A DNA stretch of 64,000 nt, taken from IMG/VR virus record IMGVR_UViG_3300017971_000185, positions 62,001 through 126,000 of that record; one strand, given 5' to 3'. Positions within the stretch are counted from its first letter, which is position 1; every line of letters begins with the position of its first letter. The translations under genes and the position numbers were made by a program. The notes beneath the pieces were generated by a model, which did no database searches, had not been told where the DNA came from, and was given only the letters and a program-made list of their open reading frames with translations. Positions 939-15,932 of the stretch are shown in pieces.

Positions 939-3900
939 ATGCCAGACGGCACCCAGATTCCTGGTCACATTTACGCGCCCCCCAACGTCTACGTCGAGAC
1001 TCAGACTGACACGCCGGTTCAAGCACCGATTCAGGGTGTTCGCATTCCGGTGTTCATCGGCACGGGCAACGAGGTTCTGACTCAGACGGATCTCGCGGTG
1101 GTTCGCGGGTCGTCTTCCAGTGTTGACCAGCAGGTTCCGCAGGAGGACATGACCGGCCGCGCGGTTGTCGCAATTCTGGCTTCCGGCGAGGTCGTCCTGG
1201 GTGACTTCGATGGTGATCGGCGGCTCATCCAGGTGCGCAATTATCCCATCGTCACGGGCGACGGGACGGGTACCACGGCGACGGATGCAGCCAGCATCCA
1301 GGTGACGATCAACGGGCAGCCTGACGTGGTTTTGAACGTCCAGGGGGACAGAGGGGTGCTTGAGCTTTCGACGGCTCCAGGGCTCCATGACGACGTGAGA
1401 TGCACGTATTTCTTCAACCGGACCGACACGCTGATCACGGACGACGTGAGCGATCAGGTGACTGCGGATCCCGCGCTCATTTACGGGAGCGGCGAGGAAC
1501 CCGCAGGCGGCTACGACATCACGGTGGACAACAATGAGTTGATCCTGACCATCGATGGCGTCGAGACCACCATCAGCCTGGGGACGCCGGGCGTGAAGCC
1601 CGCAGCTACCGTGGTCTCGTTGATCAACGGAGCGGCCTCTTCTACGTCTCTTGTGGCTTCGCTCTACACCACGAATTTCGGCGGCACTGCCATCCAATTC
1701 GTGGCCGACGAAAACCTCATCGTTGGTGCCGGTACGGCCAACACACTTCTTGGTCTGACCACGGGTGACGCGACCAATCGGCGCTCGACGTTCTACACAT
1801 TCCAGGGTCCGATCGTTGACGGTTCCAACGGAGGAATCACGACCACGGACACCGGGAAGGTGACGGTCCGCGTCAACAATGTCCAGGTCATCCCCACGTC
1901 CGTCAATGGATCGACGCGAGCGGTGACGTTGCCCTTTGCTCCGGCTGCTGGCTCGACCGTCACCATCGAGTACTTTTTCAATAGTTGGCAAGATACCTTC
2001 GACTATCTGGCGAACATCAACCTCACGGAGATCACCCGAGTCGGCATCGTTCCGGGGAACAGCGATTTCGTGCAGGGTGCGGACTTCGTGCTCAAGGATG
2101 ATGTCATTGTCTGGGGTACGTCGGTTCTCATCACTTCGGGTGTTCACACCGAAGGAAGCACGTACTTCGGTGGAGATGGAGGCCAGGTCAGCGCGCTCTT
2201 GGTGGATGCGCAGACGTACTTGGAGGAAGCCACTCCTGTCACGGATGCGACGGTCAGCCCGCCAGTTACGAGTCGGACGAAATTCGACCTTCCGTTCCAG
2301 CCCACGACGGGCAACGGACGCAACACGCCGATCGGGTTGAGTCTGTTCCAGACGGTCAGCAACAACCGTATCGATCTTCCGACCAATCGCCCGGATCTGG
2401 TGATCGCCTATTGGGGCTTCTCGGTCGAGGATGCTTTGCAGCGTGGTCCGGTGGACGTGACAGCGGTCGAGGGAACCAGGATCACTTTGAAGGATCCCGT
2501 GGACGTGGGTGCAACGGTCTACGCCACGTTCTACTACAACACGCTCGTAGATGAGGAGTACAGCCTGGTTTGTGACGTGGCTGGTGCTTCGGGCATTGGT
2601 ACCTATTTCATCCAAGACTCGAATAGCAACGACATGTTCACGCCGCGGTTTGGCGTGAAGGGGGCTGCGCTCACGGGCATCACCATCCAATTCCCGAGCG
2701 GCAGCGAGCTAACCCCGGACGTGCGTTTCGAGAGTGGTACGGACGGTCCGGTCGAGGAGACGGTCACGGTCTCGTTCGCGAGCATCGATGACACGATTGC
2801 GAAGTACAGCGTGCCCGGATCGGGACCGTACTTCACGATCGAGGATGCCTCTGATCATGCACGTTTCTTGATCGACGGCACGGCACCGACTGGTGGCGGA
2901 GCGGGAATCGATCTTGCCCGTGTGGACGGAATCACCGGCTTGGGCGTGTCGGCCAGCTTGCTGGGCGAGGAGATCGAGTATGACGTAGCCTCGGGCAGCA
3001 CGACCTACGACATTACGGCCGGGACCAACGACGAGGTTTCGGTCACGGTCGATGATGTGCTCATTACGTCGATCGCTGCGGCAGGAACGGGTGTCAACGC
3101 GGACAACTACGTTGACGCGCTCAATGCTTTCGCCAAGCTGCAACAGTTTGCTCCGTTCTACACGGCACAGACACGTTTCGTGGGGTCGACGGTCATTACT
3201 GCCGGCGAGTACGACACTTTGGTCATGCACTACAATGGTGCTGTGGCAGGCCCATCGGGTGCGATCACGGCGATCATTCCGCCGCTGACCTACGCCAGCC
3301 CCATGGCTCTGGCAACGGCTCTGGATGGAGTGATTGCAGCCGCAGTCGGTGGTTTGGGTCCGGCGTTTGCCGGGTTGGCGATCAACGTTACTGTGGATGC
3401 CAATAGCCGGCTCCGATTCACGTTGCAGGCGGCGACGGGAGACATCGGCACTTTCGCGGCCGGTGGTGTCATCACCGTGGCGTTAGTGCCGGTCGTGGGT
3501 GACCAGATCATCTTCACGGATTGGGCTGGGAACCAGGCAGCACTCACGGCAGATACGGCCACAACGCCAGGCGGCAACAACTTCGACGTGTCGTCCGGTG
3601 TGGCAGCCACGATCGCTGGTCAGATCGCTATAGCGATTCAAGATGTGACGAACAACGTGGCTTCGATCGTGACCACGACGGGCGCTGTTGGTGTGACGAT
3701 TCCAGTGGTGCCAACTGTTCCGGGTACGCTCGGAAACCGGGTCGTCATGGCCGAATCCGCCGCAACTCCGGCAACCTTCACGTTCGTACAGCCTTCGGGC
3801 GCGACGGACTTGGCAGGTGGCTATTTGGAGTTTGCGGACGCACCGACGCTTGCCAGCGATTTCGCGATTCTGGCAGGCATCAGCGTGGCTCCGGCACCGG

Positions 3901-6278
3901 GAGGATTGCAGACCAAGTTGCTCAACGGAGACATCGCTCGGCGCTTCTCGGTAGCGGGCGGTTCCGGTGCGCTTATCTACGATCGCATCATTCTCCGCAA
4001 CCGCATCATGCCTGGATCGGGCAGCGTGGCCGGGCCTTCCCAGCTTGCGCAGACAGAGCTACGCATCGAGGGGAACAATGCGATCACGGAGACGGGTCTC
4101 CAGCCCAACGACGCTGGGTTGGCGGCGATGGGGGCGGTCGTGCAGCCAGCGACGCTGTTTGGCGAAGTGGGGTTTGTCAGCGGTCAGGTGCCGACAGGCG
4201 CCTACGGGGATGCTCGCGACGGGCAGCCGGTGGTGACGTTCTTCGCAGACGGAGGCACACAGCCGCAGAACAACGTGTTCAAGATCAACATCGATGGCAT
4301 CATGGTGAACGTCACGTTCACGGATGCTGCGGGTGTGGTCATTCCGGCTGGCGGCACAGCAGACGTACCGTTGGGGCCGGGAACGATCGCGAACACGATT
4401 CTGGCACAGCTAGACGCCGCCGCAGTGGCGGCTGGGTTGCCCGCGGGCACGTTCTTGCCAGAAGGCGCTGGTATTCGGATCGTGAGCGGCACGTCTCGCG
4501 TGTCCTCAGCGATCACGGTTGGAGCCGGGAATGCCAACGATGTGTTGGGATTCTCGTCTGGCGGCACGGCGGCACGGACGGAGGTAGAGCCCGAGCAGAT
4601 TGCTTCGGCTCTCATGGCGCATCACGACGCAACGGTATCGGCCAAGCTCCTGAGCTACTCCTCGCCAGGAGTGACCTACTTCGCTGGCTTGGCTCTTGCT
4701 GGTGTCATCAGGGATGCGGCGAATGCCGAATTCCTGTACCTCCAGAGTCAGGCGAGCACGGTCGGAGGTCTGGGTCTGTCGAGCAGCATTGCGCTGCTAC
4801 AGCCCACGGTTGGAAACGGTAGCTGGCTGCTTCCAGGCACGGGCATCAATGCCGAGGTTGGTGACGGCGCATCCGGTGAGGAAGGCTTCAACGGATACTA
4901 CGTCACATCGTCCGATCCGACAGACGGGTCCGGGTCAGCGAACACGTCGAGGCTCAACAACGGAGTGGGTCAAGATGGCGTGATCGGCCAGACGTATCGA
5001 GATACCGTCACGGGTCTCACGTTCACGGTTCTGGCACGTGAGGGTGGCGGGGTGTACCCGACTGGTGTGGGTGCAACCTTCACTTTCGAGGTACGCAATA
5101 AGGTCATCACGGACAGCAACCTTCCGGTCAACACAATCCCCGGAATCGAGCTTTTGGTGACGAACACCACTGGCGTCGCGGTCGGGGACACGGCTGTGGT
5201 CGATACGATCGAGCGCGGGGGCAGCGAGCCTGCCGTGGGCGATCTCTACTACGCGACCTACAACTACCAAAAGGAAAGTTTCGACACTGGCTTGTACACA
5301 CGGCTGGCAACGATCGAGCGTGTGTTTGGTGCAACATCGCCAGAGCATCTTCTGTCCCTGGCGGCGTATGTGTCGATCATCAACGGGGCGGTTGTCGTTG
5401 GGCTCAAACAGGTTCCCAAGCAGCCCAACAGCAATCAGGGCAGTATCACGGACTACTTCGATGCCGTGGACGATGTGCGTGGAGTCCTCCCAGGTGGGGC
5501 GAGGCTCAGCACGCTCACTCCGTTGCGTGGAGACTCGGAGGAGCTATTCCAGAAGATCAGTCAGCATGTTGATCTCCAGTCCAGCATCCGGCTGCGATCG
5601 GAGAGAACCTCGATCTTTGGCGTTTCCTCGGGGACGCAGCCCTCGGCTGCGGGAGACCTGGCCGAGTTGCTGGGCAACACCCGGATGAGGATGGTCTACC
5701 CAGACATCGCCAAGATCACGCTGACCGATGCGGTGAACAACGACAAGCAATTCCTGGTTGACGGCACGATTCTCTCGGCGGCAATGGCAGGAAACCGAGC
5801 AAGCCCGAACATCGACGTGGCAACGCCATGGACACGGGCACGATTGCTCGGGTTCGATGAGCTTGCTCGTATCCTCGATGCGGTCGAGCAGAATCAGGTT
5901 GCCGTGCGCGGCGTGACGATCTTGGAGGATCGCCGTCCGGCAATCAGTGTGCGCCATGGGCTCACGACGGATGTCACCAACGTCCTGACCAAGACCCCAA
6001 CCGTGATGACGATTGCGGATGAGGTACAGCAGCAGACTCGCGTGACGCTGGACAGGTTCATCGGGGTCAAATTCCTGCCCGGTATCCTGAATCAGATCGA
6101 AGGTCGCCTGACCTTCATGCTCAAGGGGCTCATCGCGGCGGAGATCATCGCTGCCTTCACTGGAGTGCAGGCTCAGACAACGAGTGATCCAACGGTGGTT
6201 GCGGTCGAAGCATGGTATCAGCCTGTTTTCCCGCTACTATACATCATCGTCACCTTCAACCTCCGCTCAGTTTTGTGA
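939..6278 (+). CDS. Contractile tail sheath protein, very large with inserted domains
   Basis: N-terminal YAPPNVYVE (PGVY-type motif); C-terminal sheath domain ...TVMTIADEV...DRFIG...DPTVVAVEAWYQPVFPLLYIIVTFNL; upstream of tube and tape measure genes. Confidence 0.9.
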   Translation: MPDGTQIPGHIYAPPNVYVETQTDTPVQAPIQGVRIPVFIGTGNEVLTQTDLAVVRGSSSSVDQQVPQEDMTGRAVVAILASGEVVLGDFDGDRRLIQVRNYPIVTGDGTGTTATDAASIQVTINGQPDVVLNVQGDRGVLELSTAPGLHDDVRCTYFFNRTDTLITDDVSDQVTADPALIYGSGEEPAGGYDITVDNNELILTIDGVETTISLGTPGVKPAATVVSLINGAASSTSLVASLYTTNFGGTAIQFVADENLIVGAGTANTLLGLTTGDATNRRSTFYTFQGPIVDGSNGGITTTDTGKVTVRVNNVQVIPTSVNGSTRAVTLPFAPAAGSTVTIEYFFNSWQDTFDYLANINLTEITRVGIVPGNSDFVQGADFVLKDDVIVWGTSVLITSGVHTEGSTYFGGDGGQVSALLVDAQTYLEEATPVTDATVSPPVTSRTKFDLPFQPTTGNGRNTPIGLSLFQTVSNNRIDLPTNRPDLVIAYWGFSVEDALQRGPVDVTAVEGTRITLKDPVDVGATVYATFYYNTLVDEEYSLVCDVAGASGIGTYFIQDSNSNDMFTPRFGVKGAALTGITIQFPSGSELTPDVRFESGTDGPVEETVTVSFASIDDTIAKYSVPGSGPYFTIEDASDHARFLIDGTAPTGGGAGIDLARVDGITGLGVSASLLGEEIEYDVASGSTTYDITAGTNDEVSVTVDDVLITSIAAAGTGVNADNYVDALNAFAKLQQFAPFYTAQTRFVGSTVITAGEYDTLVMHYNGAVAGPSGAITAIIPPLTYASPMALATALDGVIAAAVGGLGPAFAGLAINVTVDANSRLRFTLQAATGDIGTFAAGGVITVALVPVVGDQIIFTDWAGNQAALTADTATTPGGNNFDVSSGVAATIAGQIAIAIQDVTNNVASIVTTTGAVGVTIPVVPTVPGTLGNRVVMAESAATPATFTFVQPSGATDLAGGYLEFADAPTLASDFAILAGISVAPAPGGLQTKLLNGDIARRFSVAGGSGALIYDRIILRNRIMPGSGSVAGPSQLAQTELRIEGNNAITETGLQPNDAGLAAMGAVVQPATLFGEVGFVSGQVPTGAYGDARDGQPVVTFFADGGTQPQNNVFKINIDGIMVNVTFTDAAGVVIPAGGTADVPLGPGTIANTILAQLDAAAVAAGLPAGTFLPEGAGIRIVSGTSRVSSAITVGAGNANDVLGFSSGGTAARTEVEPEQIASALMAHHDATVSAKLLSYSSPGVTYFAGLALAGVIRDAANAEFLYLQSQASTVGGLGLSSSIALLQPTVGNGSWLLPGTGINAEVGDGASGEEGFNGYYVTSSDPTDGSGSANTSRLNNGVGQDGVIGQTYRDTVTGLTFTVLAREGGGVYPTGVGATFTFEVRNKVITDSNLPVNTIPGIELLVTNTTGVAVGDTAVVDTIERGGSEPAVGDLYYATYNYQKESFDTGLYTRLATIERVFGATSPEHLLSLAAYVSIINGAVVVGLKQVPKQPNSNQGSITDYFDAVDDVRGVLPGGARLSTLTPLRGDSEELFQKISQHVDLQSSIRLRSERTSIFGVSSGTQPSAAGDLAELLGNTRMRMVYPDIAKITLTDAVNNDKQFLVDGTILSAAMAGNRASPNIDVATPWTRARLLGFDELARILDAVEQNQVAVRGVTILEDRRPAISVRHGLTTDVTNVLTKTPTVMTIADEVQQQTRVTLDRFIGVKFLPGILNQIEGRLTFMLKGLIAAEIIAAFTGVQAQTTSDPTVVAVEAWYQPVFPLLYIIVTFNLRSVL

Positions 6279-6322
6279 GGTACACTAGCGCTCTAGGCTA
6301 GTACAGAGCCCAAAAGCGGCGT

Positions 6323-6352
6323 TTGCCGTGGGGTCTGTGGTGGTGGTATGGT
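6323..6352 (+). promoter_or_regulatory. Sigma70-like promoter for a leaderless nuclease-MTase mRNA
   Basis: TTGCCG (6323-6328)-N18-TATGGT (6347-6352) with TGn extension; ATG 6 nt downstream at 6359 and no clear SD. Confidence 0.5.
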
Positions 6353-6358
6353 GGTGGT

Positions 6359-8542
6359 ATGGATGAGGAGATCTGTGCAGCCTTTCGGTCCGATCTGTCT
6401 TCTGCCGCGGTTGCTGAATCGTTGGGGGTTGGTCGACAGCGTGTTCTCAAAGTCTGGAAGGCTTCCTTTGGTGCCGGTGAGGTAAGAGCACGTGCGAATA
6501 GGCTTCGCTCTCGCCCCAAGAAAGAAGATCCTCAGCAACGGGCAGCAGCTCTGCCGTGGTTCGCTGAGGGTGTGGCAGTCAAGGAGGCTGCGCGAAGATT
6601 GGGTGTCCACTATCTCAAGGTTCAACGATGGTGGATCGAAGAGTTTGGAGAAGAAGTATATCGGAGTCGTGGAAAGCGTCTTCAAGCTGCGCGAACGGCA
6701 GCCAATAACCGTAGAGGATTGCCGAAGACGCAAACGGTTGTACGAGTCGCCTGTGAAGACTGCGGCACGGAACACGACCGTACAATGATGAGTTTGGCCA
6801 AGGCTGCGCGGCTCATTTGTCCAACGTGTAAGAGCAAGAAGCAAGATCCGCATGCGTGTCCGGTGTGTGGTTTTGTGTTCGAAGGCGCTCGGGGGTTGGC
6901 GTCTCATTTTCGGCATCAACGGAATTGCTCTGCGCATAAGGAGTATCGACGCAAGCAATGGGAAGTCCTGGCAAGTCGGACTGACGAGTACGTGACTTGC
7001 CAGGAGTGTGGCTTCGTAGGTCGGTCGATTTCGGCTCATATTCAAACACACGACCTAAATTGGAGGAGCTACACGCGTAAGTATCCTGGTGCTCCTCTGT
7101 ATTCGGCGATCTCAGAGGCACGGAGGCGTGCTCGTATCCGGGAAACACATGCCAGGTACGGATTCACATACGCGGACTTCAAGGCGTACCTGGATGACGA
7201 GCATCGTTTGATTGTGGCGGCTGCGGCTAAGGGATTGGGAGTTGCTCAAGATACGGTGCGGACATACGCGAAGAAACTAGACATCCCTACGCGGAATCGA
7301 TTGGCGTGGCAGCGAGAAGTCTTGCAGACGGTAGCTGATGTTTTGGGCGAAGCGTATAAGTGGGAATGGTCTGACGATCGTATTCGAAATCCCGAGACGG
7401 GGAGGTTACTGAATTATGACGGCTGTTTTCCCAAGTCAAAGGTGATCGTGGAGTGCCATGGAATTCAGCATTACCAGTTTGTTCCTCGATGGCACCGTCT
7501 TCCAGAGGAATTTGTCAAGTTGCGGGAGCGAGACGTTTACAAAAAAGAGCGAGCGGAGGAGCTTGGCTATACCGTGATCGAAGTGCGCTATGATGCAGAG
7601 GTATCTCGTGAGTTTTTCATGGAGTTGTTGCGAGCACCAAAGAAGAGTCGTCAGGCGGTGAAGGACAAGGCCGAGACAATTCTGCGGGAGCTACGGAGGG
7701 ATTGCTTTCCGTTTCCGGTGATCGATCCAGAGGAGACTCGGAGGGAGTTGGAAAGGCTACAACGGAAGCGCCTGAAGTTAGTTGACGGGATTATCGTTCC
7801 TCGTTCGTGGGTTGGGACCAAAGTCTGCAAAGCATATTTCCCCAATCTCTTCCAAGCCAGGTACAAGAATCAGCTATCGGCTGTAGAGGCGTGGAATTCG
7901 GATGAGAAGCTCCGGCTTGCTATCCTGACTCAACTAGACTCGTCGCATCCGACGACACCAGAACGAGTGCTTAAGGCGATTCTGATGCATCATCGGGTTC
8001 CTACGGTTTTCCGTCCAGCTTATGCTCGATACTTGTATGACCGCTACTGCCCGGAAGGCAAGACAACATGGGATCCTTGCGCAGGGTGGGGCGGGCGTCT
8101 CTTGGGCGCCGCAGCGGCGAATGTGAGATACATCGGAACGGAGATTGATGCTCTTACTGTCGAGGGGAATCGCAGGTTAGCTTCCGATCTGCGGCATGAC
8201 GCGGAGATCATTGAAGGGTCGGCATTGGGCGCGGACATCCCTCAGGTAGACTTTGTATTCACCTCTCCGCCCTACTATGACGTTGAGCAGTATTCAGACC
8301 ATCCTGAACAACCTCACATGCGATTTGGTTCCGAGGAGGATTGGGTAGAGGGGTTTCTCTTGCCTTTGGTCAGGAAGGCACGTTCTGTGCTGCCTCAAGG
8401 CTGCGCTATGGCTCTCAACCTCTCCGATGCCTTGCTAGGGCGTCTAGAAGAGTGCGCTTTTGATTGTGGTTTTGAGCTTGAGACCGTGGTTGGCTTTGAG
8501 CTTCCGAATGGAAAGGTTGCTCGGACAGCCGTTTACCGATAG
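6359..8542 (+). CDS. HTH/zinc-finger + PD-(D/E)xK (DUF559/Vsr-like) endonuclease fused to amino-DNA methyltransferase
   Basis: CEDC..CPTC, CPVC..H..H, CQEC..H..H fingers; NYDGCFPKSKVIVECHGIQHY..RDVYK nuclease motif; MTase motif I WDPCAGWGGRLLG and motif IV FTSPPYY; more A/T-ending codons than neighbours. Confidence 0.85.
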   Translation: MDEEICAAFRSDLSSAAVAESLGVGRQRVLKVWKASFGAGEVRARANRLRSRPKKEDPQQRAAALPWFAEGVAVKEAARRLGVHYLKVQRWWIEEFGEEVYRSRGKRLQAARTAANNRRGLPKTQTVVRVACEDCGTEHDRTMMSLAKAARLICPTCKSKKQDPHACPVCGFVFEGARGLASHFRHQRNCSAHKEYRRKQWEVLASRTDEYVTCQECGFVGRSISAHIQTHDLNWRSYTRKYPGAPLYSAISEARRRARIRETHARYGFTYADFKAYLDDEHRLIVAAAAKGLGVAQDTVRTYAKKLDIPTRNRLAWQREVLQTVADVLGEAYKWEWSDDRIRNPETGRLLNYDGCFPKSKVIVECHGIQHYQFVPRWHRLPEEFVKLRERDVYKKERAEELGYTVIEVRYDAEVSREFFMELLRAPKKSRQAVKDKAETILRELRRDCFPFPVIDPEETRRELERLQRKRLKLVDGIIVPRSWVGTKVCKAYFPNLFQARYKNQLSAVEAWNSDEKLRLAILTQLDSSHPTTPERVLKAILMHHRVPTVFRPAYARYLYDRYCPEGKTTWDPCAGWGGRLLGAAAANVRYIGTEIDALTVEGNRRLASDLRHDAEIIEGSALGADIPQVDFVFTSPPYYDVEQYSDHPEQPHMRFGSEEDWVEGFLLPLVRKARSVLPQGCAMALNLSDALLGRLEECAFDCGFELETVVGFELPNGKVARTAVYR

Positions 8543-8798
8543 TCGTTCTAGTCGTGTTTTCCCATCAGAGGATCGGGCTTCGTTGCAGAAGCGACGAAAC
8601 GGGGGCTTGCAAGAAGCCTCTTGCCAAGAGTCGTAGCCAGGTTCGGCGTATTCGCCAGCGAACCAGATCGCTTCGATTTGGCGTCGTCCTTGGGGCGTCT
8701 TGGCCGAACGAACGGCAGCTTGTAGGGCTGGGCGACACGTCATGGGAGCCATTGGGTGCTTTCTCAGCACATCGATGGCGTGGTGTTTCGCAACTACG

Positions 8799-8869
8799 GC
8801 CGAAGCCCAAGGGCGGTATCGATTCCCGTCCTTGGGCTGTCACGCCATTGTCGGGTTAGTTGAAGTCAC
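8799..8869. repeat. 71-bp direct repeat copy 1 (hairpin + duplicated DUF932 3' end)
   Basis: 68/71 identical to 9907-9977 (offset 1108); includes hairpin 8804-8838. Confidence 0.95.
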
Positions 8870-8906
8870 CCGCTGCTGTATATTCAACCTCAGGTCGGTG
8901 CTGTAG
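8870..8906 (+). pseudogene. Relic of a second allele of the tail sheath 3' end
   Basis: ccg ctg ctg tat att / ttc aac ctc agg tcg gtg ctg tag encodes PLLYI and FNLRSVL*, matching sheath end PLLYIIVTFNLRSVL* (6231-6278) with synonymous differences and 11 nt fewer. Confidence 0.85.
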
Positions 8907-8920
8907 TTGCTCAGTCTTGG

Positions 8921-8942
8921 GGCCGCCGGATTTCCGGCGGCC
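8921..8942. terminator. Perfect GC hairpin, probable bidirectional terminator
   Basis: GGCCGCCGGA-TT-TCCGGCGGCC between relic sheath stop and the stop of the convergent gene at 8943. Confidence 0.7.
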
Positions 8943-9311
8943 TCACTTCTTCTTGACCTTCCAGGGAGTGGTCTCTTCTGGGTGGAACGTGGCCTCGATG
9001 CCAGCCTCATCGAGCGCGCCAACGAGATCAAGAAGCATCAGGAGCGAAGTCTCGATCGTGTCTTTTGGGGACTTGGTGGAAAACTTGTAAGCCTGGTCTC
9101 CGAAACGGAGGGAGACGGTTTGACAGTCGCTAGAGATGTGGATGGACGAGTGGTCTCGGATGCTCATGCGTGCCTCTACCGCTCGCGCTTCGGCTGCGTC
9201 GCGCTTGTCTTGCAGTGCAGTTGTTGTCGATACATGGTCCACGAACCGCACCCACCCGCCGTCGTCGGCCGCGTACATGCCGGAAGGTCTCCATTCGTAT
9301 CGCTTATCCAC
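8943..9311 (-). CDS. Hypothetical protein
   Basis: 122-aa ORF overlapping the upstream gene stop, ends at the terminator hairpin. Confidence 0.65.
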   Translation of the reverse strand: MDKRYEWRPSGMYAADDGGWVRFVDHVSTTTALQDKRDAAEARAVEARMSIRDHSSIHISSDCQTVSLRFGDQAYKFSTKSPKDTIETSLLMLLDLVGALDEAGIEATFHPEETTPWKVKKK

Positions 9312-9633
9312 TGTCCGACTTCTTTCCGTAACGCCCGATGCACTCGTCGCGTTTGCGTTGGATCTCGGTCTCGTCTTGCTCGGTGGTGCGGGGTGGCCTG
9401 TCGTTCATCCACGCGAGGTCAAAGGCAGCGCACGCCTTCTCGGGAGTGTCGCCAAACCCGGCCACGCCAACCTGCAAGTCTTCGCCTAGCAGCGCGCACC
9501 ACTGGTTTCCGTCTGGGAAAATGCGTGGCCGGAACACGACTGAGGGGCGCGAATACTGCTCGCCTACGATCGCTGCCTGTCTACAGATCTCTGCGCCTGC
9601 GGCCGTTGCTTCTAGCCCGACCGTCGTCCTCAT
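9304..9633 (-). CDS. Phage hypothetical protein (DGNQWCAL...GVAGFGDTP, possibly HicB-like fold)
   Basis: ATG at 9633 with GGAG SD; recognisable phage motif; the listed longer ORF start (9918) is unlikely. Confidence 0.7.
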   Translation of the reverse strand: MRTTVGLEATAAGAEICRQAAIVGEQYSRPSVVFRPRIFPDGNQWCALLGEDLQVGVAGFGDTPEKACAAFDLAWMNDRPPRTTEQDETEIQRKRDECIGRYGKKSDSG

Positions 9634-9634
9634 C

Positions 9635-9697
9635 TCACTTCTCCCATTGTCCGAAGCCGGCATCGCGATAGCCAGGTCGTCCCGTGTAGTTAGCCAT
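9635..9697 (-). CDS. 20-aa peptide MANYTGRPGYRDAGFGQWEK
   Basis: Fills the gap between RHH stop (9699) and next ATG (9633) with 1-nt spacers; GGAAGG upstream. Confidence 0.4.
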   Translation of the reverse strand: MANYTGRPGYRDAGFGQWEK

Positions 9698-9698
9698 A

Positions 9699-9860
9699 TT
9701 AGCCTTCCAGGGGTGGTAGGGCGACTTGGAGGACAGCCCGTACCAGCGTAGAGGGCGATACCCCGCGGTCCCTCGCTATCTTCTCCAGCCGGGCGCGGTA
9801 GCCTGCCGGCAACCGAAGGTGGAAATGCTCGGAAAGCTCGACGCCCCTGTTCGAGAGCAC
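9699..9860 (-). CDS. Ribbon-helix-helix (CopG/Arc-like) DNA-binding protein
   Basis: HFHLRLPAGYRARLEKIARDRGVSPSTLVRAVL fits the RHH pattern; start (GTG 9860) uncertain. Confidence 0.7.
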   Translation of the reverse strand: MLSNRGVELSEHFHLRLPAGYRARLEKIARDRGVSPSTLVRAVLQVALPPLEG

Positions 9861-9906
9861 GAAGTCGATCTGGGTTGAAAGGTCTCTTGATCGCAATGTT
9901 GCACCT

Positions 9907-9977
9907 GCCGAAGCCCAAGGGCGGTATCGATTCCCGTCCTTGGGCTGTCGCGCCGTTGTCAGGTTAGTTGAAGTCAC
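9907..9977. repeat. 71-bp direct repeat copy 2 (DUF932 stop + terminator-like hairpin 9912-9946)
   Basis: AGCCCAAGGGCGG-N9-CCGTCCTTGGGCT just downstream of DUF932 TAA. Confidence 0.95.
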
Positions 9978-10770
9978 GCCGGAGGCCACAGAAGCCATCG
10001 AGCAGGACGTGAAGCTGCTCAGTCTTGGCCGGAAGGGTGAAGAGATCGTTGCTTTCGCGTCGGGGCTTGAGAACCTCGGTAAACGCGTTCATCAGCCGCC
10101 AGGTGGTCGGTCCCGCTTCTCGGAATTCGGGGTGACGGGGCTCTCTCCACTCGGAGAGGATCTGCGAGATCTTGCTGGAGGCGATGACATCGGCATCGAG
10201 CGCGCGAATGAGCAGGTCGTTTACCTGCGCGTCGTTTAGCTCGTGCTGCTTGTACGTCGCGAGGCGCTGGTCTTGGAAGTCCTTGAGCGCTGCGACTTGC
10301 TGGAGAGCCTCGGCGATCAGCTTGGCAAGATCGCGAAGGATGTTCGGGGTGTGCTTGCGACCGACCTTGATTTCGCCGGAGAAGCACAGGTTGTCGCAAA
10401 CGAACACGCCCGAGCCGACTACAAGGCCAGCCAGGAACGTCTTGTCGTTGGCGTTGCGGAGCCCGAGGATGATGCTGTAGTCCGGGTCGAGGATCGGGCT
10501 GTTCATCTCCGTGGGAACAGGATCGAGCACCGGAGCCGGTGCTACTTCCAGCATTCCGAAGTAGCGCAGGTTCTCGTGAGAGAGTGCGTGTACCTCTTGG
10601 ATGGTGGTTAGCCCCACGGTGGTGATTTGGTTCTCCACTTCCTCCAGCAGTGTGCTGTGGGGGATGGGGGTGTGTCTTGGGCCGGCGGCCTCAGGCTCGG
10701 GCAGCGTAAAGAGGACTTCCCGAGGAACCTGATGGGCACCGCAGTGAGTCAAGAGGTTGAGGTTTGTCAT
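9964..10770 (-). CDS. DUF932-family protein
   Basis: HTPIPH, GLRNANDK, VFVCDNLCFSGE, RKHT, TTWRLMNAFTE motifs; GGAG SD. Confidence 0.85.
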   Translation of the reverse strand: MTNLNLLTHCGAHQVPREVLFTLPEPEAAGPRHTPIPHSTLLEEVENQITTVGLTTIQEVHALSHENLRYFGMLEVAPAPVLDPVPTEMNSPILDPDYSIILGLRNANDKTFLAGLVVGSGVFVCDNLCFSGEIKVGRKHTPNILRDLAKLIAEALQQVAALKDFQDQRLATYKQHELNDAQVNDLLIRALDADVIASSKISQILSEWREPRHPEFREAGPTTWRLMNAFTEVLKPRRESNDLFTLPAKTEQLHVLLDGFCGLRRDFN

Positions 10771-10788
10771 GTCGTATCTCCTGTCTCT

Positions 10789-10816
10789 TCTACGCGAGAT
10801 TCGGGGGAAAGTTTAC
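10789..10816 (-). promoter_or_regulatory. ECF-like early promoter GTAAACTT-N12-CGCGTAGA, copy A
   Basis: Identical boxes and spacing in three places, each 17-18 nt before an ATG. Confidence 0.8.
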
Positions 10817-10824
10817 ATAGTCGC

Positions 10825-11280
10825 TCATTCGCATCGGCGAATCGGAGCTTTTCTAGGTTGCGGGGTGTTTACATAGTATGTCTTCGCTTCGGATCTGAGC
10901 CACTTCAAGAAGATGGTAACCCTCGGTGCGTCGTATTCGTTCACGGTTTTCAAGGGCGCGTCCATACCCTTCTTAAAGGCTGCGAAGGCTTGCTTTTGCT
11001 TCATCCACAGACCGTCGCTGGGTATGAGCCATAGACGTTCCCAATTGTTGCTCAGGCAGAGGGCTTCATCGAGAGACTCGACAGGCTCAAAGTACCAAGC
11101 CCAGTGCCCCTTGCAGGTTCCACCGATGCAGCCGGGCGAGATGACCCAACCCTCTTCGTAGTCCTTGCAAAGTGTGCCGATGGTGATGCCTTCTACGCGC
11201 ACGTCGTATTGACAAGCGTTGCGGTGCTTTTCGGCCAGCCGCTTGAATTCGACGTTCATCTTTTGGTAGCCGCTGATCAT
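10825..11280 (-). CDS. Hypothetical protein
   Basis: ATG 2 nt after PolX stop; 151 aa. Confidence 0.6.
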   Translation of the reverse strand: MISGYQKMNVEFKRLAEKHRNACQYDVRVEGITIGTLCKDYEEGWVISPGCIGGTCKGHWAWYFEPVESLDEALCLSNNWERLWLIPSDGLWMKQKQAFAAFKKGMDAPLKTVNEYDAPRVTIFLKWLRSEAKTYYVNTPQPRKAPIRRCE

Positions 11281-11282
11281 GT

Positions 11283-12023
11283 TTAGCTCGCTATCTCGCA
11301 CTCTTTGTTGTACTTGGCCTGAGCGGTCTCGATGTGACGGCATTTGCGCCGAAACTGGAAGCCCTCGCACTCGCAATTCCAGCGGTTGTTCTTGCCAAGC
11401 CAGACTCGGTAAGAACCATCCTTGGCGCTCGGGATCTCGCACTCCCATTCGACTTCGCCACGGAAGCACTTGAGATCGTCACGAGCGGGCGGGGTGGTGT
11501 ACTCCAGCCCGAGCGCTTCGAAAACCTCGCGTTCGGTCTTACCGGCGATGCGCCGATACCAGCGCTTTTCAGTCTCGCCCTTCCGCTTGACGTGAATGAA
11601 CGCGTAGCCCTGGGACTCGTCCGTTTCCTCGGGATCACATGGCTTGTATACGCCCTTTTCGTTGAGGAGTAGCCCCAGCGCGGCGGCGTGGCTTCGCATC
11701 TTGATGTTGAAGGTATGCGGGCCGGTCAGGTAGAGCCACGCGGCGCCGAAGCCATCTTCATCGGGCGCTCGGATCACGTCTACCTGCATGCCACCCACGA
11801 TGAGCCGGATCTTGGCATCCTTTCCTTGGACCCACTCGAAACCAGCTTTCTCGATTTCCGCCTGTGTGGGTAGCGTGCCGAGGAACACGATATCGACATC
11901 GCGAACGTACTCTTTGCCACGACGGAGAGAGCCGGCGATCTTGGCTTCCTTACCGAGCAAGGCGAGGACGGGAGCTACTCGCTCGACCGCGACGCCCTGG
12001 GGAATCTTCTTACCTTTGCTCAT
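11283..12023 (-). CDS. Minimal X-family DNA polymerase with C-terminal SWIM zinc finger
   Basis: AGSLRRGKEYVRDVDIV, QVDV, YLTGP..FNIKMR, LNEKG, TEREVFEALGLEY..P..R; then YRV...WNCECEGFQFRRKCRHI (CxC-xn-CxH). Confidence 0.88.
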   Translation of the reverse strand: MSKGKKIPQGVAVERVAPVLALLGKEAKIAGSLRRGKEYVRDVDIVFLGTLPTQAEIEKAGFEWVQGKDAKIRLIVGGMQVDVIRAPDEDGFGAAWLYLTGPHTFNIKMRSHAAALGLLLNEKGVYKPCDPEETDESQGYAFIHVKRKGETEKRWYRRIAGKTEREVFEALGLEYTTPPARDDLKCFRGEVEWECEIPSAKDGSYRVWLGKNNRWNCECEGFQFRRKCRHIETAQAKYNKECEIAS

Positions 12024-12619: not shown

Positions 12620-12877
12620 ATGGCTCTGGCCAAGATCATTAGGTTTGTCCGCTTGGCGGACGGCAAGACCAAGCTGGAGGCGAAGCGTGGAGCGAAGAAT
12701 CCCTACTTGAACACGCCGCCGACTGTGTTGAAACGCGATCTCGAAAAGGAGACCAATCCCATGAAACGCAAGTTGATGAGCGACGCATTGAATGCTTGGC
12801 GGATGACGCATGGGAATCCTTTGGCTCGTTCTGCGGCTCGTGTAGCTGCGCGTTGGCTCGACAGCGGAGGGACCTGA
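12620..12877 (+). CDS. Small basic hypothetical protein
   Basis: 85 aa, K/R-rich, stop 2 nt before the SpeD-like ATG. Confidence 0.65.
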   Translation: MALAKIIRFVRLADGKTKLEAKRGAKNPYLNTPPTVLKRDLEKETNPMKRKLMSDALNAWRMTHGNPLARSAARVAARWLDSGGT

Positions 12878-12879
12878 CG

Positions 12880-13275
12880 ATGCATGGGCCGTTTGCTGGT
12901 TGGCACCTAATCGTGGATGCTCTCGTCGGGTCTGGAGATCCCACTGACCGGTTGGCGGATGTTGAGTTTCTGGAGACGTTTCTCAGGGATCTCGTGATCC
13001 ATCTGGATATGAAGATCCTGGGCGGTCCCTACATGAATGTGGTCGAGCCCGATTCGAAGCTCATTGAGACGGAAGAGGATGAGGGTGGGGTGACAGGATG
13101 TGTAGTGATCACAACGAGCCATATCTCACTGCACACGTGGCCGCTACGCAACCGCTTCTCCCTCGACATCTACTCGTGCAAGCAGTTTGACCCGGATGCA
13201 GCTAAGGACTTCATCACGGGACGACTTAGTTGCACGGAGCGAAGTATCAACTGGACGCAGCGGCTCTGGCCTTAG
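12880..13275 (+). CDS. speD: S-adenosylmethionine decarboxylase-like pyruvoyl proenzyme
   Basis: GWHLIVD, GGVTGCVVITTSHISLHTWP, DIYSCK; GGAGG SD before ATG 12880. Confidence 0.85.
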   Translation: MHGPFAGWHLIVDALVGSGDPTDRLADVEFLETFLRDLVIHLDMKILGGPYMNVVEPDSKLIETEEDEGGVTGCVVITTSHISLHTWPLRNRFSLDIYSCKQFDPDAAKDFITGRLSCTERSINWTQRLWP

Positions 13276-13722: not shown

Positions 13723-14520
13723 ATGCCAAACACCGATCTAGTCCAGGGAGGCGCAGCAGGGCTCCAGGGCTCTAGCTCCGTCTACGACTACGGGACTTCC
13801 CCCAACACGAGAACAGCCGTTTCACAGAAGGTGAGGATCTTGTCCCCGGCCTACGGGACGACAAGTCAGCTTCTTCAGATTGGCGTGCTGACCAACTTCA
13901 CACCTTCCGAGAGTCGCACTGTCGAGCCCCTACGCGGCATTGGGTTTGGCGATCAGATCGCTGAGCTTGTGCCGTCCGTGACGACAGAGATGACGCTGAG
14001 CTTTGAGCGAGCGTTGCTCTACATGGCGAATCTCTGGCAGGCGACTGGTTACGCTGGAGGCATCGACGGGCCCGTGCGTTCGTTGAAGCATCACAGGTGG
14101 CCGTTCGATGTGGAGGAGCAGCTTGTGTTTTCGACTCTTGTCGATATGGCACTTGGAGTCGAGAACGTGGGCTACCAGGGTCAGGGTTTCCAGGGAGGAA
14201 CGGCTCAGATCGTCTATCCCGATCAGCTAGATGGCGAGACCGGCCCGACTCCCAACGGTCCTTTCCCGCAGGGTGGCCAGCAGGGACACACGGCCATCAT
14301 CACCATGTACGAGGCGTGCTGGTTCACGTCTTGGTCCAAGACCAACATCACCCGCGACACGGGAATGCTCATGGAGACGGGAGATGCGATGGTCACCGAC
14401 GTTCACGACTTCGCCTCCGAGTACGGAGAATTTCTGGCTACGGGCAACGACCCATCCGTAGGCCAGCTTGGATCAGTCAGGTTTGGCGATCCACAGGCAG
14501 GAGGGACGCCGTTCGGCTAG
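13723..14520 (+). CDS. Tail tube protein
   Basis: IGVLTNFTPSESRTVEPLRGIG..ELVP, PFD, YEACWFTSWS tube-fold pattern; AGGAG SD; position between sheath and tape measure. Confidence 0.8.
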   Translation: MPNTDLVQGGAAGLQGSSSVYDYGTSPNTRTAVSQKVRILSPAYGTTSQLLQIGVLTNFTPSESRTVEPLRGIGFGDQIAELVPSVTTEMTLSFERALLYMANLWQATGYAGGIDGPVRSLKHHRWPFDVEEQLVFSTLVDMALGVENVGYQGQGFQGGTAQIVYPDQLDGETGPTPNGPFPQGGQQGHTAIITMYEACWFTSWSKTNITRDTGMLMETGDAMVTDVHDFASEYGEFLATGNDPSVGQLGSVRFGDPQAGGTPFG

Positions 14521-14526
14521 GGTACA

Positions 14527-14708
14527 GTGGCCTAAAACCGAGCAGTCGGTGGTTTCCAAGAATCAGACGCAGATGAATATCAGATCATATCCAGATTCCC
14601 GTGCTGTCTCCTAAACCCTATATCAGATCCAGACCCACATAGATCAGACCCAGATTCGTTTGCGCTGTTTTCCAGGCCACCGCTTGCTCTCTCAACGGGA
14701 GTAGCGGT
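14527..14708 (+). ncRNA. Candidate structured leader with CAGA repeats and SD-sequestering hairpin
   Basis: Closing stem GTGGCCT (14527-33)/AGGCCAC (14674-80) around 8 CAGAY units; hairpin 14679-14708 pairs GGGAG just before ATG 14709. Confidence 0.5.
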
Positions 14709-15932
14709 ATGACAATCAACTTTGAGGCTCTGCAAGCCTCGCTCGAAAAGATCGGGCAACTAGGCCAAGCGGAGCGTTCTTTCAAAGCAGGCGACCACGC
14801 GATCACCATTCGTGTGCTTCAAGCACGTGAGGAGATCGAGGTCGATAAGTACGCTCAGATAGCCTGGGATGAGGCTTCGGGAGATGAAGACCGGGCTGCC
14901 TTGGCGGACTACATCGATCGGGTGCGGGTAGCCACTCTGTCACACGTCATCGTTCAGATTGGCGATCAAGACCTTCGACGGGAGGAGTTTGTCGAGACGG
15001 GGGAGGAGGACGAGAACGGGAACAAGGTCAAGAAGCCTCGTTATCTCGTGATTCGCGAGATGATCGGCAAGTGGAGTCGGCCTGTTTTGCACATGTGTTA
15101 CCTCAACTACGGGACTTTGGTTCAAGAAGTCGAGAGTGCTTCTAGTAAGAGTATCGAGTCCTCAGAGGCTAACGTCGGGGGAGAGATCGATCGCCTTCAA
15201 ACGCGGTTAGAGAACCTCAAGCGCATTCAGAGTGAGCAGAAGGCCATGGCTGATCGTGCCGCCATGACGGCGCAGACACGAGAGGCTCTCGGTGAGTACA
15301 GCCAAGCCCATGAGGATCACATTGACCGACTGGCAACTGTGACGGGAGAGGTTGTAGAAGAGTCCGAGTCCGAGCCCGAGGCCGCGCCCAAGGCTGAAGG
15401 CGCGACCGAGCCCCCGAAGCGGCCTGTCAGACGAGAGCCGACGATACCACGTCGGGCAGTGCCGCCTGTGCGCGCTCAGAAGTCCGAACCTGTTGATGCG
15501 GACGGGATACCGCTGCCACATGAGGGGGATTCGTTCTACGATCCGGCCGATGGGGATGCGGCTGTAGCGGCTGAGCACAAACGTCTGGAAGCTTTCCGAC
15601 AACAAAAGATGCGGGCGCAATCGAGACCCACAGCAGAACCAGAAGCGCCTGAATCTCCAGAACCGGAACCGGAGCCCCTTGAGCCTTTGCCTGGGGTGAC
15701 GCGAGGACGGAAGCCGCCACACCGAGACGCACTCAACACGGCTGACGCCGTGCTCAATCTTCAGGGAGAGACGGTAGTGGACCAGCCCAAAGCTGCCACG
15801 GAAGCAGTAGAGGGTGTTCGATTGCCGACAGAGACCCTAAGTCCTCGATCGAAGCCAACAGAAAAACCAACGAAGGCTCCTGTGGATCCTCCACCAACGG
15901 GCTCAAGAAACCCGCGGTTTAGAGGTGCGTAG
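14709..15932 (+). CDS. Probable tail assembly chaperone with long Pro/Glu-rich C-terminus
   Basis: Position between tube and tape measure; ITIRVLQAREE chaperone-like start. Confidence 0.6.
   Translation: MTINFEALQASLEKIGQLGQAERSFKAGDHAITIRVLQAREEIEVDKYAQIAWDEASGDEDRAALADYIDRVRVATLSHVIVQIGDQDLRREEFVETGEEDENGNKVKKPRYLVIREMIGKWSRPVLHMCYLNYGTLVQEVESASSKSIESSEANVGGEIDRLQTRLENLKRIQSEQKAMADRAAMTAQTREALGEYSQAHEDHIDRLATVTGEVVEESESEPEAAPKAEGATEPPKRPVRREPTIPRRAVPPVRAQKSEPVDADGIPLPHEGDSFYDPADGDAAVAAEHKRLEAFRQQKMRAQSRPTAEPEAPESPEPEPEPLEPLPGVTRGRKPPHRDALNTADAVLNLQGETVVDQPKAATEAVEGVRLPTETLSPRSKPTEKPTKAPVDPPPTGSRNPRFRGA

What the first reader, a model, noticed from the sequence alone, without database searches (positions are those of the whole stretch)
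6231..8942. Nuclease-methyltransferase fusion that looks like a homing element targeting the sheath gene 3' end
Seen: one polypeptide joins HTHs, three Zn fingers, a PD-(D/E)xK nuclease and an SPPY-type MTase. It sits directly after the sheath gene with its own promoter. The resident sheath end uses codons atypical here (cta cta, tca gtt ttg), while a second copy of that end with typical codons (ctg ctg, tcg gtg ctg) lies 2.6 kb downstream, just before a terminator. Established: free-standing phage homing endonucleases cut a neighbouring conserved gene in competing phages and carry a resistant allele; an MTase fusion is not the usual layout. Inference: the element invaded at the sheath end and brought a recoded immune allele. 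The MTase may mark self DNA or protect off-target sites, making this a homing/restriction-modification hybrid for phage-phage competition.
Basis: partly seen in the sequence, partly recalled or inferred. Interest (0 to 1): 0.85.

Follow-up and report, generated by a model that had tools for sequence, protein, structure and literature searches.

The report
Homing nuclease-methylase behind phage sheath gene
A 497-kb phage carries, right after its probable tail-sheath gene, a gene fusing a Vsr-type DNA-cutting domain to a DNA methylase; relatives of it sit at this same spot in many related phages and behave like a selfish homing gene, a nuclease-methylase combination I found no report of.

Summary
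ORF 6359-8542 (727 aa) has two HTH repeats, three zinc motifs, a third HTH, a Vsr-like PD-(D/E)xK nuclease and a TSPPY DNA amino-methyltransferase. It follows a 1779-aa probable tail-sheath gene.

A 37-nt relic of that gene's end (8870-8906, FNLRSVL-stop) lies just before the terminator. The closest relative (L004) has the empty site, with gene end and terminator adjacent.

The homing reading is strongly supported by comparison:
- All 12 family members looked up in unbiased protein hits abut the 3' end of a sheath homolog, one in convergent orientation.
- The gene is absent from 7 of 19 distinct related lineages.
- Nuclease and sheath trees conflict (AU p 7e-6 and 0.005).
- The sheath's last 18-49 codons lose GC3 toward the nuclease gene's value in most nuclease-bearing loci, and in no empty locus.

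The same methylase module is fused to LAGLIDADG or HNH domains in about 44 of 69 other proteins.

Cleavage, immunity of the resident allele and the methylase's role are untested. A 71-nt duplication at the right junction suggests an irregular, one-sided repair event. This is a new variant of a known kind.

The parts
939..6278 (+). 1779-aa probable tail-sheath gene, the presumed target and host gene. Its C-terminal motif PVFPLLYI..TFNLRS is conserved across all relatives.
   Evidence: ORF. No Pfam or PHROG hit on the window protein itself. 11 of 16 relatives' C-termini hit PF17482 Phage_sheath_1C below threshold, best E 6e-4. Atlas feature hits go to tail-sheath clusters. A tube-like gene follows in relatives.
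6159..6278 (+). Last ~39 codons of the sheath gene, with lowered GC3 and rare codons. Putative donor-derived (co-converted) allele.
   Evidence: The lowest-GC3 30-codon window of the whole gene starts at codon 1738. The last 45 codons have GC3 0.60 against a gene mean of 0.72. The best change-point is the last 39 codons, 0.75 to 0.56, but p is about 0.16. The same drop is highly significant in several other nuclease-bearing loci.
6270..6372 (+). Predicted RNA hairpin running from the sheath stop to the nuclease start codon. Possible translational or transcriptional control.
   Evidence: MFE -39.9 kcal/mol, z -3.2. Analogous hairpins precede the homologs in L008 and L013, z -3.3 and -4.9. Function is inferred.
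6359..8542 (+). 727-aa fusion gene: HTH x2, three zinc motifs, HTH, Vsr-like nuclease, DNA amino-methyltransferase.
6392..7051 (+). N-terminal DNA-binding array: two tandem HTH repeats (aa 12-91), a zinc ribbon (C132...C157) and two C2H2/ROS-MucR-like fingers (C167...H186, C214...H231).
   Evidence: Pfam HTH_23, ROS_MUCR and Zn_ribbon_8, weak here and above cut-off in P0001, P0002 and P0010. Motifs read directly from the sequence.
7166..7648 (+). Third HTH (aa 270-312) plus the Vsr-like nuclease core (aa 313-430). Invariant residues are D354, G355, E365, G368, H371, D392 and K395.
   Evidence: Alignment A2 of 34 sequences. AF2 pLDDT 94. Foldseek Vsr probability 1.0. VIA Z 10.0, rmsd 3.0 over 106 residues. 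PHROG 'homing endonuclease' phrog_9084 E 2e-8.
7676..8539 (+). Methyltransferase module: a family-specific helical subdomain (aa 440-545) plus a Rossmann domain with motif I D572-R580 and motif IV T635-Y639.
   Evidence: Alignment A3 of 92 sequences. AF2 pLDDT 97. Fold nearest to Trm11, PrmC and TrmN6 amino-MTases. The profile hits DNA N4C/N6A methylases 2zie (E 7e-13) and 8s9n (E 1e-6) in permuted order. PADLOC mad2 and Type II MTase models match.
8543..8798 (.). 256-nt spacer of unknown origin between the fusion gene's stop and the repeat.
   Evidence: No match in relatives or elsewhere in the genome. No Rfam family.
8799..8869 (+). Copy 1 of a 71-nt direct repeat. It abuts the relic and forms the right junction of the insert.
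   Evidence: 68 of 71 positions identical to 9907-9977. Metagenome unitigs break here.
8870..8906 (+). Relic of the pre-insertion sheath gene end: PLLY codons, an 11-nt deletion, then FNLRSVL and stop, in typical codons.
   Evidence: 23 of 25 nt identical to the L004 gene end. Only 27 of 37 nt identical to the resident end, against 68 of 71 for the adjacent repeat (Fisher p 0.001).
8918..8945 (.). GC-rich hairpin terminator, apparently shared with the convergent gene 8943-9311 and likely the original sheath-gene terminator.
   Evidence: L004 has a terminator directly after its stop codon.
9907..9977 (+). Copy 2 of the 71-nt repeat. It covers the last 4 codons and stop of the DUF932 gene (minus strand) and the hairpin after it.

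Best explanation
ORF 6359-8542 is a free-standing homing endonuclease gene of the Vsr-like (EDxHD-like) class, with a C-terminal DNA amino-methyltransferase. Its lineage is specialised for the 3' end of the tail-sheath gene in a clade of huge phages.

Proposed mechanism (inferred):
1. In a mixed infection, the HTH and zinc-finger array binds a long site in or next to the conserved end of the sheath gene of a phage that lacks the gene.
2. The Vsr-like domain cuts there.
3. The break is repaired from the carrier genome. This copies in the nuclease gene together with the last tens of codons of the carrier's sheath gene.

In this phage the left crossover lay inside the sheath gene. The right side had no homology, because the downstream genes differ. 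It was therefore closed irregularly, leaving a 256-nt spacer, a 71-nt copy of a nearby sequence, 37 nt of the original gene end and the original terminator.

The methyltransferase most likely marks the carrier's own DNA at or near the nuclease's site, or at off-target sites. That would make the element a one-gene homing and restriction-modification hybrid. This last step is the least supported.

Shown: domain identities, position, patchy distribution, tree conflict, the compositional footprint and the relic. Inferred: cleavage, target, direction of transfer and methylase role.
For: Domains:
- Vsr is the top structural match: Foldseek probability 1.0, VIA Z 10.
- D354, E365, H371, D392 and K395 are invariant in all 34 family members, with or without the MTase.
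- The D-to-E (11) and D-to-H (17) spacings equal those from Vsr D51 to position 62, and from I-Bth0305I D196 to H213, as given in PMC2677866 and PMC3239194.
- PHROG 'homing endonuclease' family, E 2e-8.

Position:
- Homologs directly follow the sheath homolog in L008/L030, L013, L011/L022, L009/L016, L012, L018, L027, L025/L029, L019 and L023.
- All 12 members looked up from the 1.84-billion-protein search do too, at sheath identities down to about 40%. L044 lies in convergent orientation.

Mobility:
- The gene is absent in L004, L005-7, L014, L015, L017, L020 and L028. L021 holds a truncated remnant.
- L004 (93% aa identity) has the empty site.
- The nuclease data reject the sheath clade (p-AU 6.9e-6) and the sheath data reject the nuclease clade (p 0.005).

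Footprint:
- GC3 of the sheath's last 45 codons drops by 0.08-0.32 in 10 of 12 carrier loci and in 0 of 7 empty loci (Mann-Whitney p 0.0015).
- It then matches or approaches the nuclease gene's lower GC3.
- Change-points fall at the last 18-49 codons, with p below 0.004 in L008, L013, L009, L012, L018 and L021.

Relic.

MTase:
- Motifs are conserved in 92 sequences, with sequence matches to DNA N4C/N6A methylases.
- The module is fused to LAGLIDADG_2 (35), LAGLIDADG_3 (7), HNH_3 (2) or His-Me (2) in 69 other proteins.

The arrangement is reproduced in four IMG/VR assemblies and 11 metagenome runs, at even depth.
Against: - No biochemical evidence exists for cleavage or methylation.
- No promoter was found.
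- The window's own GC3 shift is not individually significant (p about 0.16).
- At the amino-acid level the resident end is still closest to L004, so a foreign origin of that segment is not proven for this phage.
- No variant of this very phage without the gene was found in the collections or in contig-level run data.
- At depth the nuclease tree and sheath tree share their root split, so some vertical descent is likely.
- The clades tested by AU were named after the trees had been seen.
- No sequence-level match to I-Bth0305I.
- The low GC3 could partly reflect regulatory signals for the downstream gene embedded in the sheath end.
- The MTase's nearest solved folds are RNA and protein amino-MTases.
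Confidence: 0.7

Rival explanations
1. Order of events reversed. The nuclease-methylase gene is the older resident. The relic arrived later, with the downstream segment (relic, terminator and the two small minus-strand genes, 8870-9906). That segment recombined in from a relative lacking the nuclease gene: one crossover in the 71-nt/DUF932 homology and one illegitimate join.
For: The segment is bracketed by the 71-nt direct repeat. The minus-strand cassette 8943-12023 has no counterpart in the relatives' loci, so it is itself an acquisition. This scenario needs the same number of irregular joins as the main model.
Against: The nearest relative, L004, has gene end, terminator and then a convergent ORF with no nuclease gene. 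That fits the relic-plus-terminator being the native state. The low-GC3 resident end matches the pattern seen wherever the nuclease gene is present. This rival changes the history but not the nature of the element.
Confidence: 0.2
2. The gene is a vertically inherited accessory gene of the structural module, for example a DNA-modification enzyme or regulator with a nuclease-like domain. It has been lost in some lineages and is not mobile. The relic is an unrelated rearrangement scar.
For: It is present next to the sheath gene across very deep divergence, and the deep split of both trees agrees. No empty-site variant of this phage was found.
Against: The trees are significantly incongruent inside a tight sheath clade. 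L044 has the gene in flipped orientation. The compositional footprint is confined to carriers. L021 holds a truncated remnant and L011 a copy disrupted by an insert. L004 has an intact terminator at the empty site. The nuclease belongs to a fold class with known homing endonucleases (PMC3239194).
Confidence: 0.08
3. The protein is a single-chain restriction-modification-type enzyme (Type IIG/IIS-like). The phage uses it against host or competitor DNA in general, with many sites and no homing. The MTase protects the phage genome.
For: Nuclease followed by MTase in one chain resembles the MmeI-type layout (PMC2731913). PADLOC Type II MTase and mad2 models match. The genome carries three further orphan N6_N4 methylases.
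Against: It does not explain the invariable adjacency to the sheath 3' end in either orientation, nor the relic. There is no target-recognition domain of the Type IIG kind and no match to N6_Mtase or Eco57I models. The long multi-module HTH and zinc-finger array is typical of long-site homing enzymes.
Confidence: 0.07

Closest known systems
Vsr-like 'EDxHD' homing endonucleases (I-Bth0305I; free-standing Vsr-like genes of 'fractured gene' loci; phage Hef-type) - PMC3239194, PMC2677866
   Same: A Vsr-type nuclease fold at the C-terminal side of a modular DNA-binding region. A conserved Asp / acidic / His / Asp set with the same spacing. Mostly found in phages, both free-standing and in introns or inteins. 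Hairpins upstream of the free-standing genes were also noted there.
   Different: No detectable sequence match to I-Bth0305I. The DNA-binding modules are HTH repeats and ROS/MucR-type zinc fingers rather than NUMOD repeats. It carries a C-terminal methyltransferase. It targets the end of a structural gene rather than replication or repair genes.
Free-standing homing endonucleases of T4-like phages (Seg, Mob; 'intronless homing') - PMC2988022, PMC2330249, PMC2790892
   Same: A gene lying between conserved genes, with patchy distribution among relatives. The presumed cut is in the neighbouring conserved gene, with co-conversion of flanking markers.
   Different: A different nuclease class (GIY-YIG or HNH there). 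Those have no methyltransferase. Here one insertion left a duplicated gene end.
Single-chain restriction-modification enzymes (MmeI family, Type IIG/IIL) - PMC2731913
   Same: A PD-(D/E)xK-superfamily nuclease and an amino-methyltransferase in one polypeptide. Self-protection by the enzyme's own methylation is the working model.
   Different: No shared sequence family. No Type IIG target-recognition domain. Recognition is presumably by HTH and zinc-finger arrays. The gene has a locus-specific, homing-like distribution.
dcm-vsr gene pair of E. coli
   Same: A Vsr-fold nuclease functionally coupled to a DNA methyltransferase.
   Different: Vsr is a T:G mismatch nickase that repairs deamination at Dcm sites, and Dcm is a C5 methylase encoded by a separate gene. 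Here the methylase is of the (S/D)PPY amino type and the context is a mobile gene. This is a resemblance from general knowledge and was not tested.

Membership tests
Vsr-like / EDxHD homing endonucleases | Vsr-type (restriction-endonuclease-like) catalytic fold | tested here: met
   AF2 pLDDT 94. Foldseek places 1vsr/1cw0 first (E 2e-4, probability 1.0). VIA Z 10.0 and 9.2, above TnsA at 8.0.
Vsr-like / EDxHD homing endonucleases | Conserved catalytic set (Vsr D51, acidic residue at position 62, H69, D97 equivalents) | tested here: inconclusive
   D354, E365, H371 and D392 are invariant in 34 sequences. The spacings 11 and 17 equal those reported for Vsr and I-Bth0305I (PMC2677866, PMC3239194). 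No residue-level structural superposition was available.
Vsr-like / EDxHD homing endonucleases | Detectable sequence homology to characterised members (I-Bth0305I, PDB 3r3p) | tested here: not met
   The profile of A2 against all PDB sequences gave no relevant hit at E up to 1. 3r3p was not among the listed fold matches. A PHROG family labelled 'homing endonuclease' does match, E 2e-8.
Free-standing phage homing endonuclease genes | Fixed insertion site next to a conserved gene, with presence/absence polymorphism among relatives | tested here: met
Free-standing phage homing endonuclease genes | Horizontal movement independent of the host gene | tested here: met
   Tree conflict with AU p 6.9e-6 and 0.005. 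The groups were named after viewing the trees. L044 has the opposite orientation.
Free-standing phage homing endonuclease genes | Site-specific cleavage of the allele lacking the gene, and biased inheritance with co-conversion | not testable with these tools
   Only an indirect footprint is available: a GC3 drop in the sheath's last 18-49 codons confined to carriers.
DNA amino-methyltransferases (N4C/N6A, (S/D)PPY) | SAM-binding motif I and catalytic motif IV in a Rossmann fold | tested here: met
   DPCAGWGGR and TSPPY are conserved in 92 sequences. Class I MTase fold, pLDDT 97. Pfam N6_N4_Mtase is below cut-off in the window protein (20.8 against 26.7 bits) and above it in relatives.
DNA amino-methyltransferases (N4C/N6A, (S/D)PPY) | DNA as substrate, and identity of the methylated base | tested here: inconclusive
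   The profile matches DNA methylases 2zie and 8s9n in permuted order, and PADLOC MTase models match. The nearest folds, however, are tRNA and protein amino-MTases.
Type IIG/IIL single-chain RM enzymes | N-terminal nuclease, gamma-class N6A MTase (N6_Mtase/Eco57I families) and a C-terminal target-recognition domain | tested here: not met
   No Pfam hit to those families. The protein ends about 90 residues after motif IV, with no TRD.

The most novel reading that the evidence does not exclude
The nuclease and methylase in one chain form a mobile, single-gene restriction-modification system with homing-length specificity. The shared DNA-binding array takes both activities to the sheath-end site. 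The carrier's copy is kept methylated (or recoded), and an unmethylated co-infecting genome is cut and converted.

More broadly, one methylase module has been combined with three unrelated homing nuclease classes: Vsr-like, LAGLIDADG and HNH/His-Me. This points to a general, undescribed 'self-marking homing endonuclease' strategy in large phages.
Probability: 0.25. Interest if true: 0.85.

Novelty: new variant of a known kind. Interest (0 to 1): 0.7.

Why it matters
Homing endonucleases and restriction-modification systems are the two classic selfish nuclease systems. They have long been compared, but I found no description of a natural protein that joins a homing-type nuclease to a DNA methylase.

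Here there is a whole family of them. It is locked to one structural gene of huge phages, and the same methylase module is also attached to LAGLIDADG and HNH domains. If the methylase provides self-immunity, that would explain how a homing enzyme can target an almost invariant coding sequence without destroying its own host.

The family would also supply long-site nuclease/methylase pairs of practical interest. In addition, the locus gives a clean natural example of co-conversion footprints and of an irregular homing scar.

Tried and rejected
- Global and local DNA alignment of the two gene ends. The score was not above shuffles, so the relic is detectable only at codon and peptide level.
- Extending the relic upstream. 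The apparent 'VGLVEV' similarity belongs to the 71-nt repeat of 9907-9977 and not to the sheath gene.
- Intron or RNA element. No Rfam family in 6000-9400 at E up to 1.
- Promoter. No sigma-70-like site and no recurrent motif of the intergenic region elsewhere in the genome.
- Relics in other carrier loci. None found. The weak L008/L030 match was not convincing.
- Other copies of the domains in the 497-kb genome. None.
- A recombination breakpoint from nucleotide identity of the window's last 45 codons. L004 remains the nearest, so this was inconclusive.
- HMMER of the nuclease profile and of the sheath C-terminus against PDB sequences. Nothing useful.
- A variant of this phage without the gene. 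Contigs of four runs, three viral contigs and two metagenome contigs all carry the gene. The 99.8% variant L051 differs by scattered, mostly non-synonymous changes and a frameshift, probably assembly noise.
- An approximate-regex scan for more repeat copies timed out. BLAST shows two copies only.
- A single synonymous position in the sheath end that would diagnose carriers against non-carriers. None is evident.

Full report
**Setting**

The window is bases 62001-126000 of a 497-kb IMG/VR virus record, CheckV completeness 94%. It is a huge phage seen in sediment and seawater metagenomes. The region of interest has three parts:
- a 1779-aa ORF (939-6278);
- a 727-aa ORF (6359-8542);
- 364 nt without a convincing ORF, ending in a strong hairpin terminator at 8918-8945 that faces a convergent gene.

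**The observation: the fusion protein**

The 727-aa ORF is uninterrupted, and full-length homologs align end to end (P0001 over residues 7-726). Read from the sequence, it begins with two tandem HTH-like repeats. Three zinc motifs follow: C132/C135...C154/C157, C167/C170...H183/H186 and C214/C217...H227/H231. Pfam support is weak for the window protein but above threshold in relatives, with ROS_MUCR at E 9e-14 in P0002 and HTH_23 in P0001.

Residues 270-430 were modelled from 34 homologs at pLDDT 94. They form a small HTH followed by a domain whose best solved matches are the Vsr endonuclease:
- Foldseek: E 2e-4, probability 1.0.
- VIA-align: Z 10.0, rmsd 3.0 Å over 106 residues. TnsA is next at Z 8.

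D354, G355, E365, G368, H371, D392 and K395 are invariant in all 34 sequences, whether or not they carry the methylase.

Residues 440-727 were modelled from 92 homologs at pLDDT 97. They form a helical subdomain plus a class I methyltransferase, with motif I DPCAGWGGR and motif IV TSPPY.
- The nearest folds are Trm11, PrmC and TrmN6-type amino-methyltransferases.
- At sequence-profile level, the two halves match DNA N4C/N6A methylases in permuted order: 2zie at E 7e-13 and 8s9n at E 1e-6.
- PADLOC Type II MTase and mad2 models also match.

**The observation: the sheath gene and its second end**

The upstream gene is probably the tail sheath. The window protein has no Pfam or PHROG hit. However, 11 of 16 relatives' C-termini hit Phage_sheath_1C at the correct end, with a best E of 6e-4. 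Atlas features point to sheath clusters, and a conserved 261-aa tube-like gene follows in all relatives.

The second copy of the gene end is real but small. The peptide FNLRSVL-stop occurs only at 6255 and 8883 in the window, against a chance expectation of 1.7e-5. It is preceded by the PLLY codons, with 11 nt missing between the two. The relic uses the gene's common codons and the resident end uses rare ones: CTA is 4% of Leu codons, TCA 2% of Ser.

No promoter could be found. Instead, the 80-nt spacer folds into a hairpin reaching the start codon (z -3.2). Similar hairpins precede the homologs in L008 and L013.

**Comparative evidence: position**

Twenty-nine viral contigs encode relatives of the sheath C-terminus. 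Three are the same phage and have the identical arrangement.

The nearest distinct relative, L004, is 93% identical at the amino-acid level and 82% at the nucleotide level. Its gene ends in the relic-type codons and is followed at once by a terminator. This is an empty site.

Homologs of the fusion gene lie 44-137 nt after the sheath stop in these loci:
- L008/L030 and L013: with methylase.
- L011/L022: split, with methylase.
- L009/L016, L012, L018, L027, L025/L029, L019 and L023: nuclease only.

They are absent in L004, L005-7, L014, L015, L017, L020 and L028. L021 keeps only a 112-aa N-terminal piece.

The exhaustive search of 1.84 billion proteins returned 5,615 hits. About 11 of the top 150 clusters have the nuclease-methylase architecture and about 25 have the nuclease without methylase. 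I looked up the genomic context of 12 of these, without choosing by context. All 12 abut the 3' end of a sheath homolog, at sheath identities as low as about 40%. In L044 the two genes converge on a shared terminator. So the link is to the DNA at the end of the gene, not to an operon position.

**Comparative evidence: mobility**

The sheath tree contains a tight clade of L008, L013, L011, L009 and L012, with branches of 0.02-0.08. In the nuclease tree, L011 groups instead with L038 and the window, and the others group with distant lineages.
- The nuclease data reject the sheath clade (AU p 6.9e-6).
- The sheath data reject the nuclease clade (p 0.005).
- Caveat: the groups were named after the trees were seen.

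**Comparative evidence: a compositional footprint**

The GC3 of the last 45 sheath codons was compared with that of the preceding 435 codons.
- It falls by 0.08-0.32 in 10 of 12 carrier loci and in none of 7 empty loci (Mann-Whitney p 0.0015).
- The terminal value equals or approaches that of the adjacent nuclease gene, whose GC3 is lower than the sheath body in every carrier.
- Change-points lie at the last 18-49 codons, with p below 0.004 in L008, L013, L009, L012, L018 and L021.
- The window shows the same direction (last 39 codons, 0.75 to 0.56) but is not significant alone (p about 0.16).

An embedded regulatory signal could contribute to it.

**The scar in this phage**

Immediately left of the relic lies a 71-nt copy (8799-8869) of 9907-9977, identical at 68 of 71 positions. 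The second copy covers the last four codons of the minus-strand DUF932 gene and the hairpin after it.

The relic and the resident end are only 27 of 37 identical, much more diverged than the repeat (Fisher p 0.001). The two gene ends were therefore already different alleles when they were brought together. They are not an in-situ duplication.

The five minus-strand genes at 8943-12023 have no counterpart in the relatives' loci. An incoming break-repair event would thus have lacked right-hand homology. The simplest history has three steps:
1. A cut occurred near the FPLLY codons.
2. The carrier genome was invaded and copied through the nuclease gene and a little beyond.
3. The end was joined to the unresected right end.

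The alternative is that the 8870-9906 segment entered a genome that already carried the gene. This cannot be excluded and is listed as a rival. No other carrier locus shows a relic, as expected where both flanks are homologous.

**The methylase**

The methylase is present in the outgroup and in two further nuclease clades, and absent in one clade. This is consistent with one loss. Its motifs are conserved.

Among 69 other proteins that have this module and a long N-terminus, the other domains are:

| Domain | Proteins |
|---|---|
| LAGLIDADG_2 (best E 1e-29) | 35 |
| LAGLIDADG_3 | 7 |
| HNH_3 | 2 |
| zf-His_Me_endon | 2 |

Most also carry HTH arrays. One of them, P0064, follows a capsid gene. 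The module is therefore habitually partnered with homing-type nucleases.

Full-text searches found the Vsr-like homing family (PMC2677866, PMC3239194) and single-chain RM enzymes (PMC2731913). They found no description of a natural homing-nuclease/methylase fusion. The searched library is incomplete, so this is absence of evidence only.

The phage has three other N6_N4 methylases elsewhere in its genome, so this one is not its only means of methylation. Which base and which sites it modifies, and whether it protects against its own nuclease, remain open.

**Verdict**

The finding is real and its central interpretation stands. This is a homing-type nuclease gene specialised for the end of the tail-sheath gene, caught here with an insertion scar, and belonging to an apparently undescribed family of nuclease-methylase fusions. 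The immune-allele and self-marking ideas are plausible but untested.

Noticed in passing
window 8799-8869 and 9907-9977: A 71-nt direct repeat, identical at 68 of 71 positions and containing a 13-bp-stem hairpin. One copy abuts the sheath relic. The other spans the end of the DUF932 gene and the next intergenic region. Metagenome unitigs break at it.
   Followed up: partly
L011 7598-11927 (also L022): The homolog of the fusion gene is split. A 325-aa N-terminal HTH/zinc part comes first, then an inserted C5 DNA methylase (PF00145, E 9e-71) and an opposite-strand HNH endonuclease (PF01844, E 2e-12), then the zinc finger/nuclease/methylase part. A second nuclease-plus-methylase unit is therefore nested in the first.
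   Followed up: partly
proteins P0010-P0142 (alignment A6); L042 6001-10683: The same methylase module is fused to LAGLIDADG_2 (35 of 69), LAGLIDADG_3 (7), HNH_3 (2) or His-Me (2) domains. P0064 (1560 aa) lies directly after a capsid gene.
   Followed up: partly
window 12796-13275: An S-adenosylmethionine decarboxylase gene (PF02675, E 3e-19) lies between the sheath and tube genes, here and in several relatives (L008, L013, L014, L015). This is an odd neighbour for structural genes, and it lies close to a SAM-dependent enzyme.
   Followed up: no
window 8943-12023 (minus strand): A five-gene cassette that includes a DUF932 protein and a polymerase-beta-thumb/SWIM protein. It has no counterpart between sheath and tube in any relative. 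The sheath-tube gap varies from 0.8 to 7.4 kb and is an insertion hot spot.
   Followed up: partly
window 14709-60346: A run of very large plus-strand ORFs (962, 1847, 817, 3634, 870, 1176, 1130 and 1814 aa). Those scanned, from 13723 to 30477, have no Pfam hit.
   Followed up: no
L011 55-7512, L038, L043, L039/L040: Sheath homologs range from 954 to about 2485 aa while keeping conserved N- and C-terminal parts, which implies large variable middle inserts. GC3 of the gene ranges from 0.24 (L017) to 0.98 (L021, L027) among relatives.
   Followed up: no
L040 10386-15167: A UvrD-type helicase two genes downstream of the fusion homolog carries an intein with a LAGLIDADG domain. In L039 and L045 the helicase follows the fusion gene without an intein. 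These phages are rich in selfish elements.
   Followed up: no
L021 about 6958-7296: A 112-aa ORF matches only the N-terminus of the L027 nuclease protein. The sheath end beside it still shows the GC3 drop (last 33 codons, 0.98 to 0.76). This looks like a decayed copy.
   Followed up: partly
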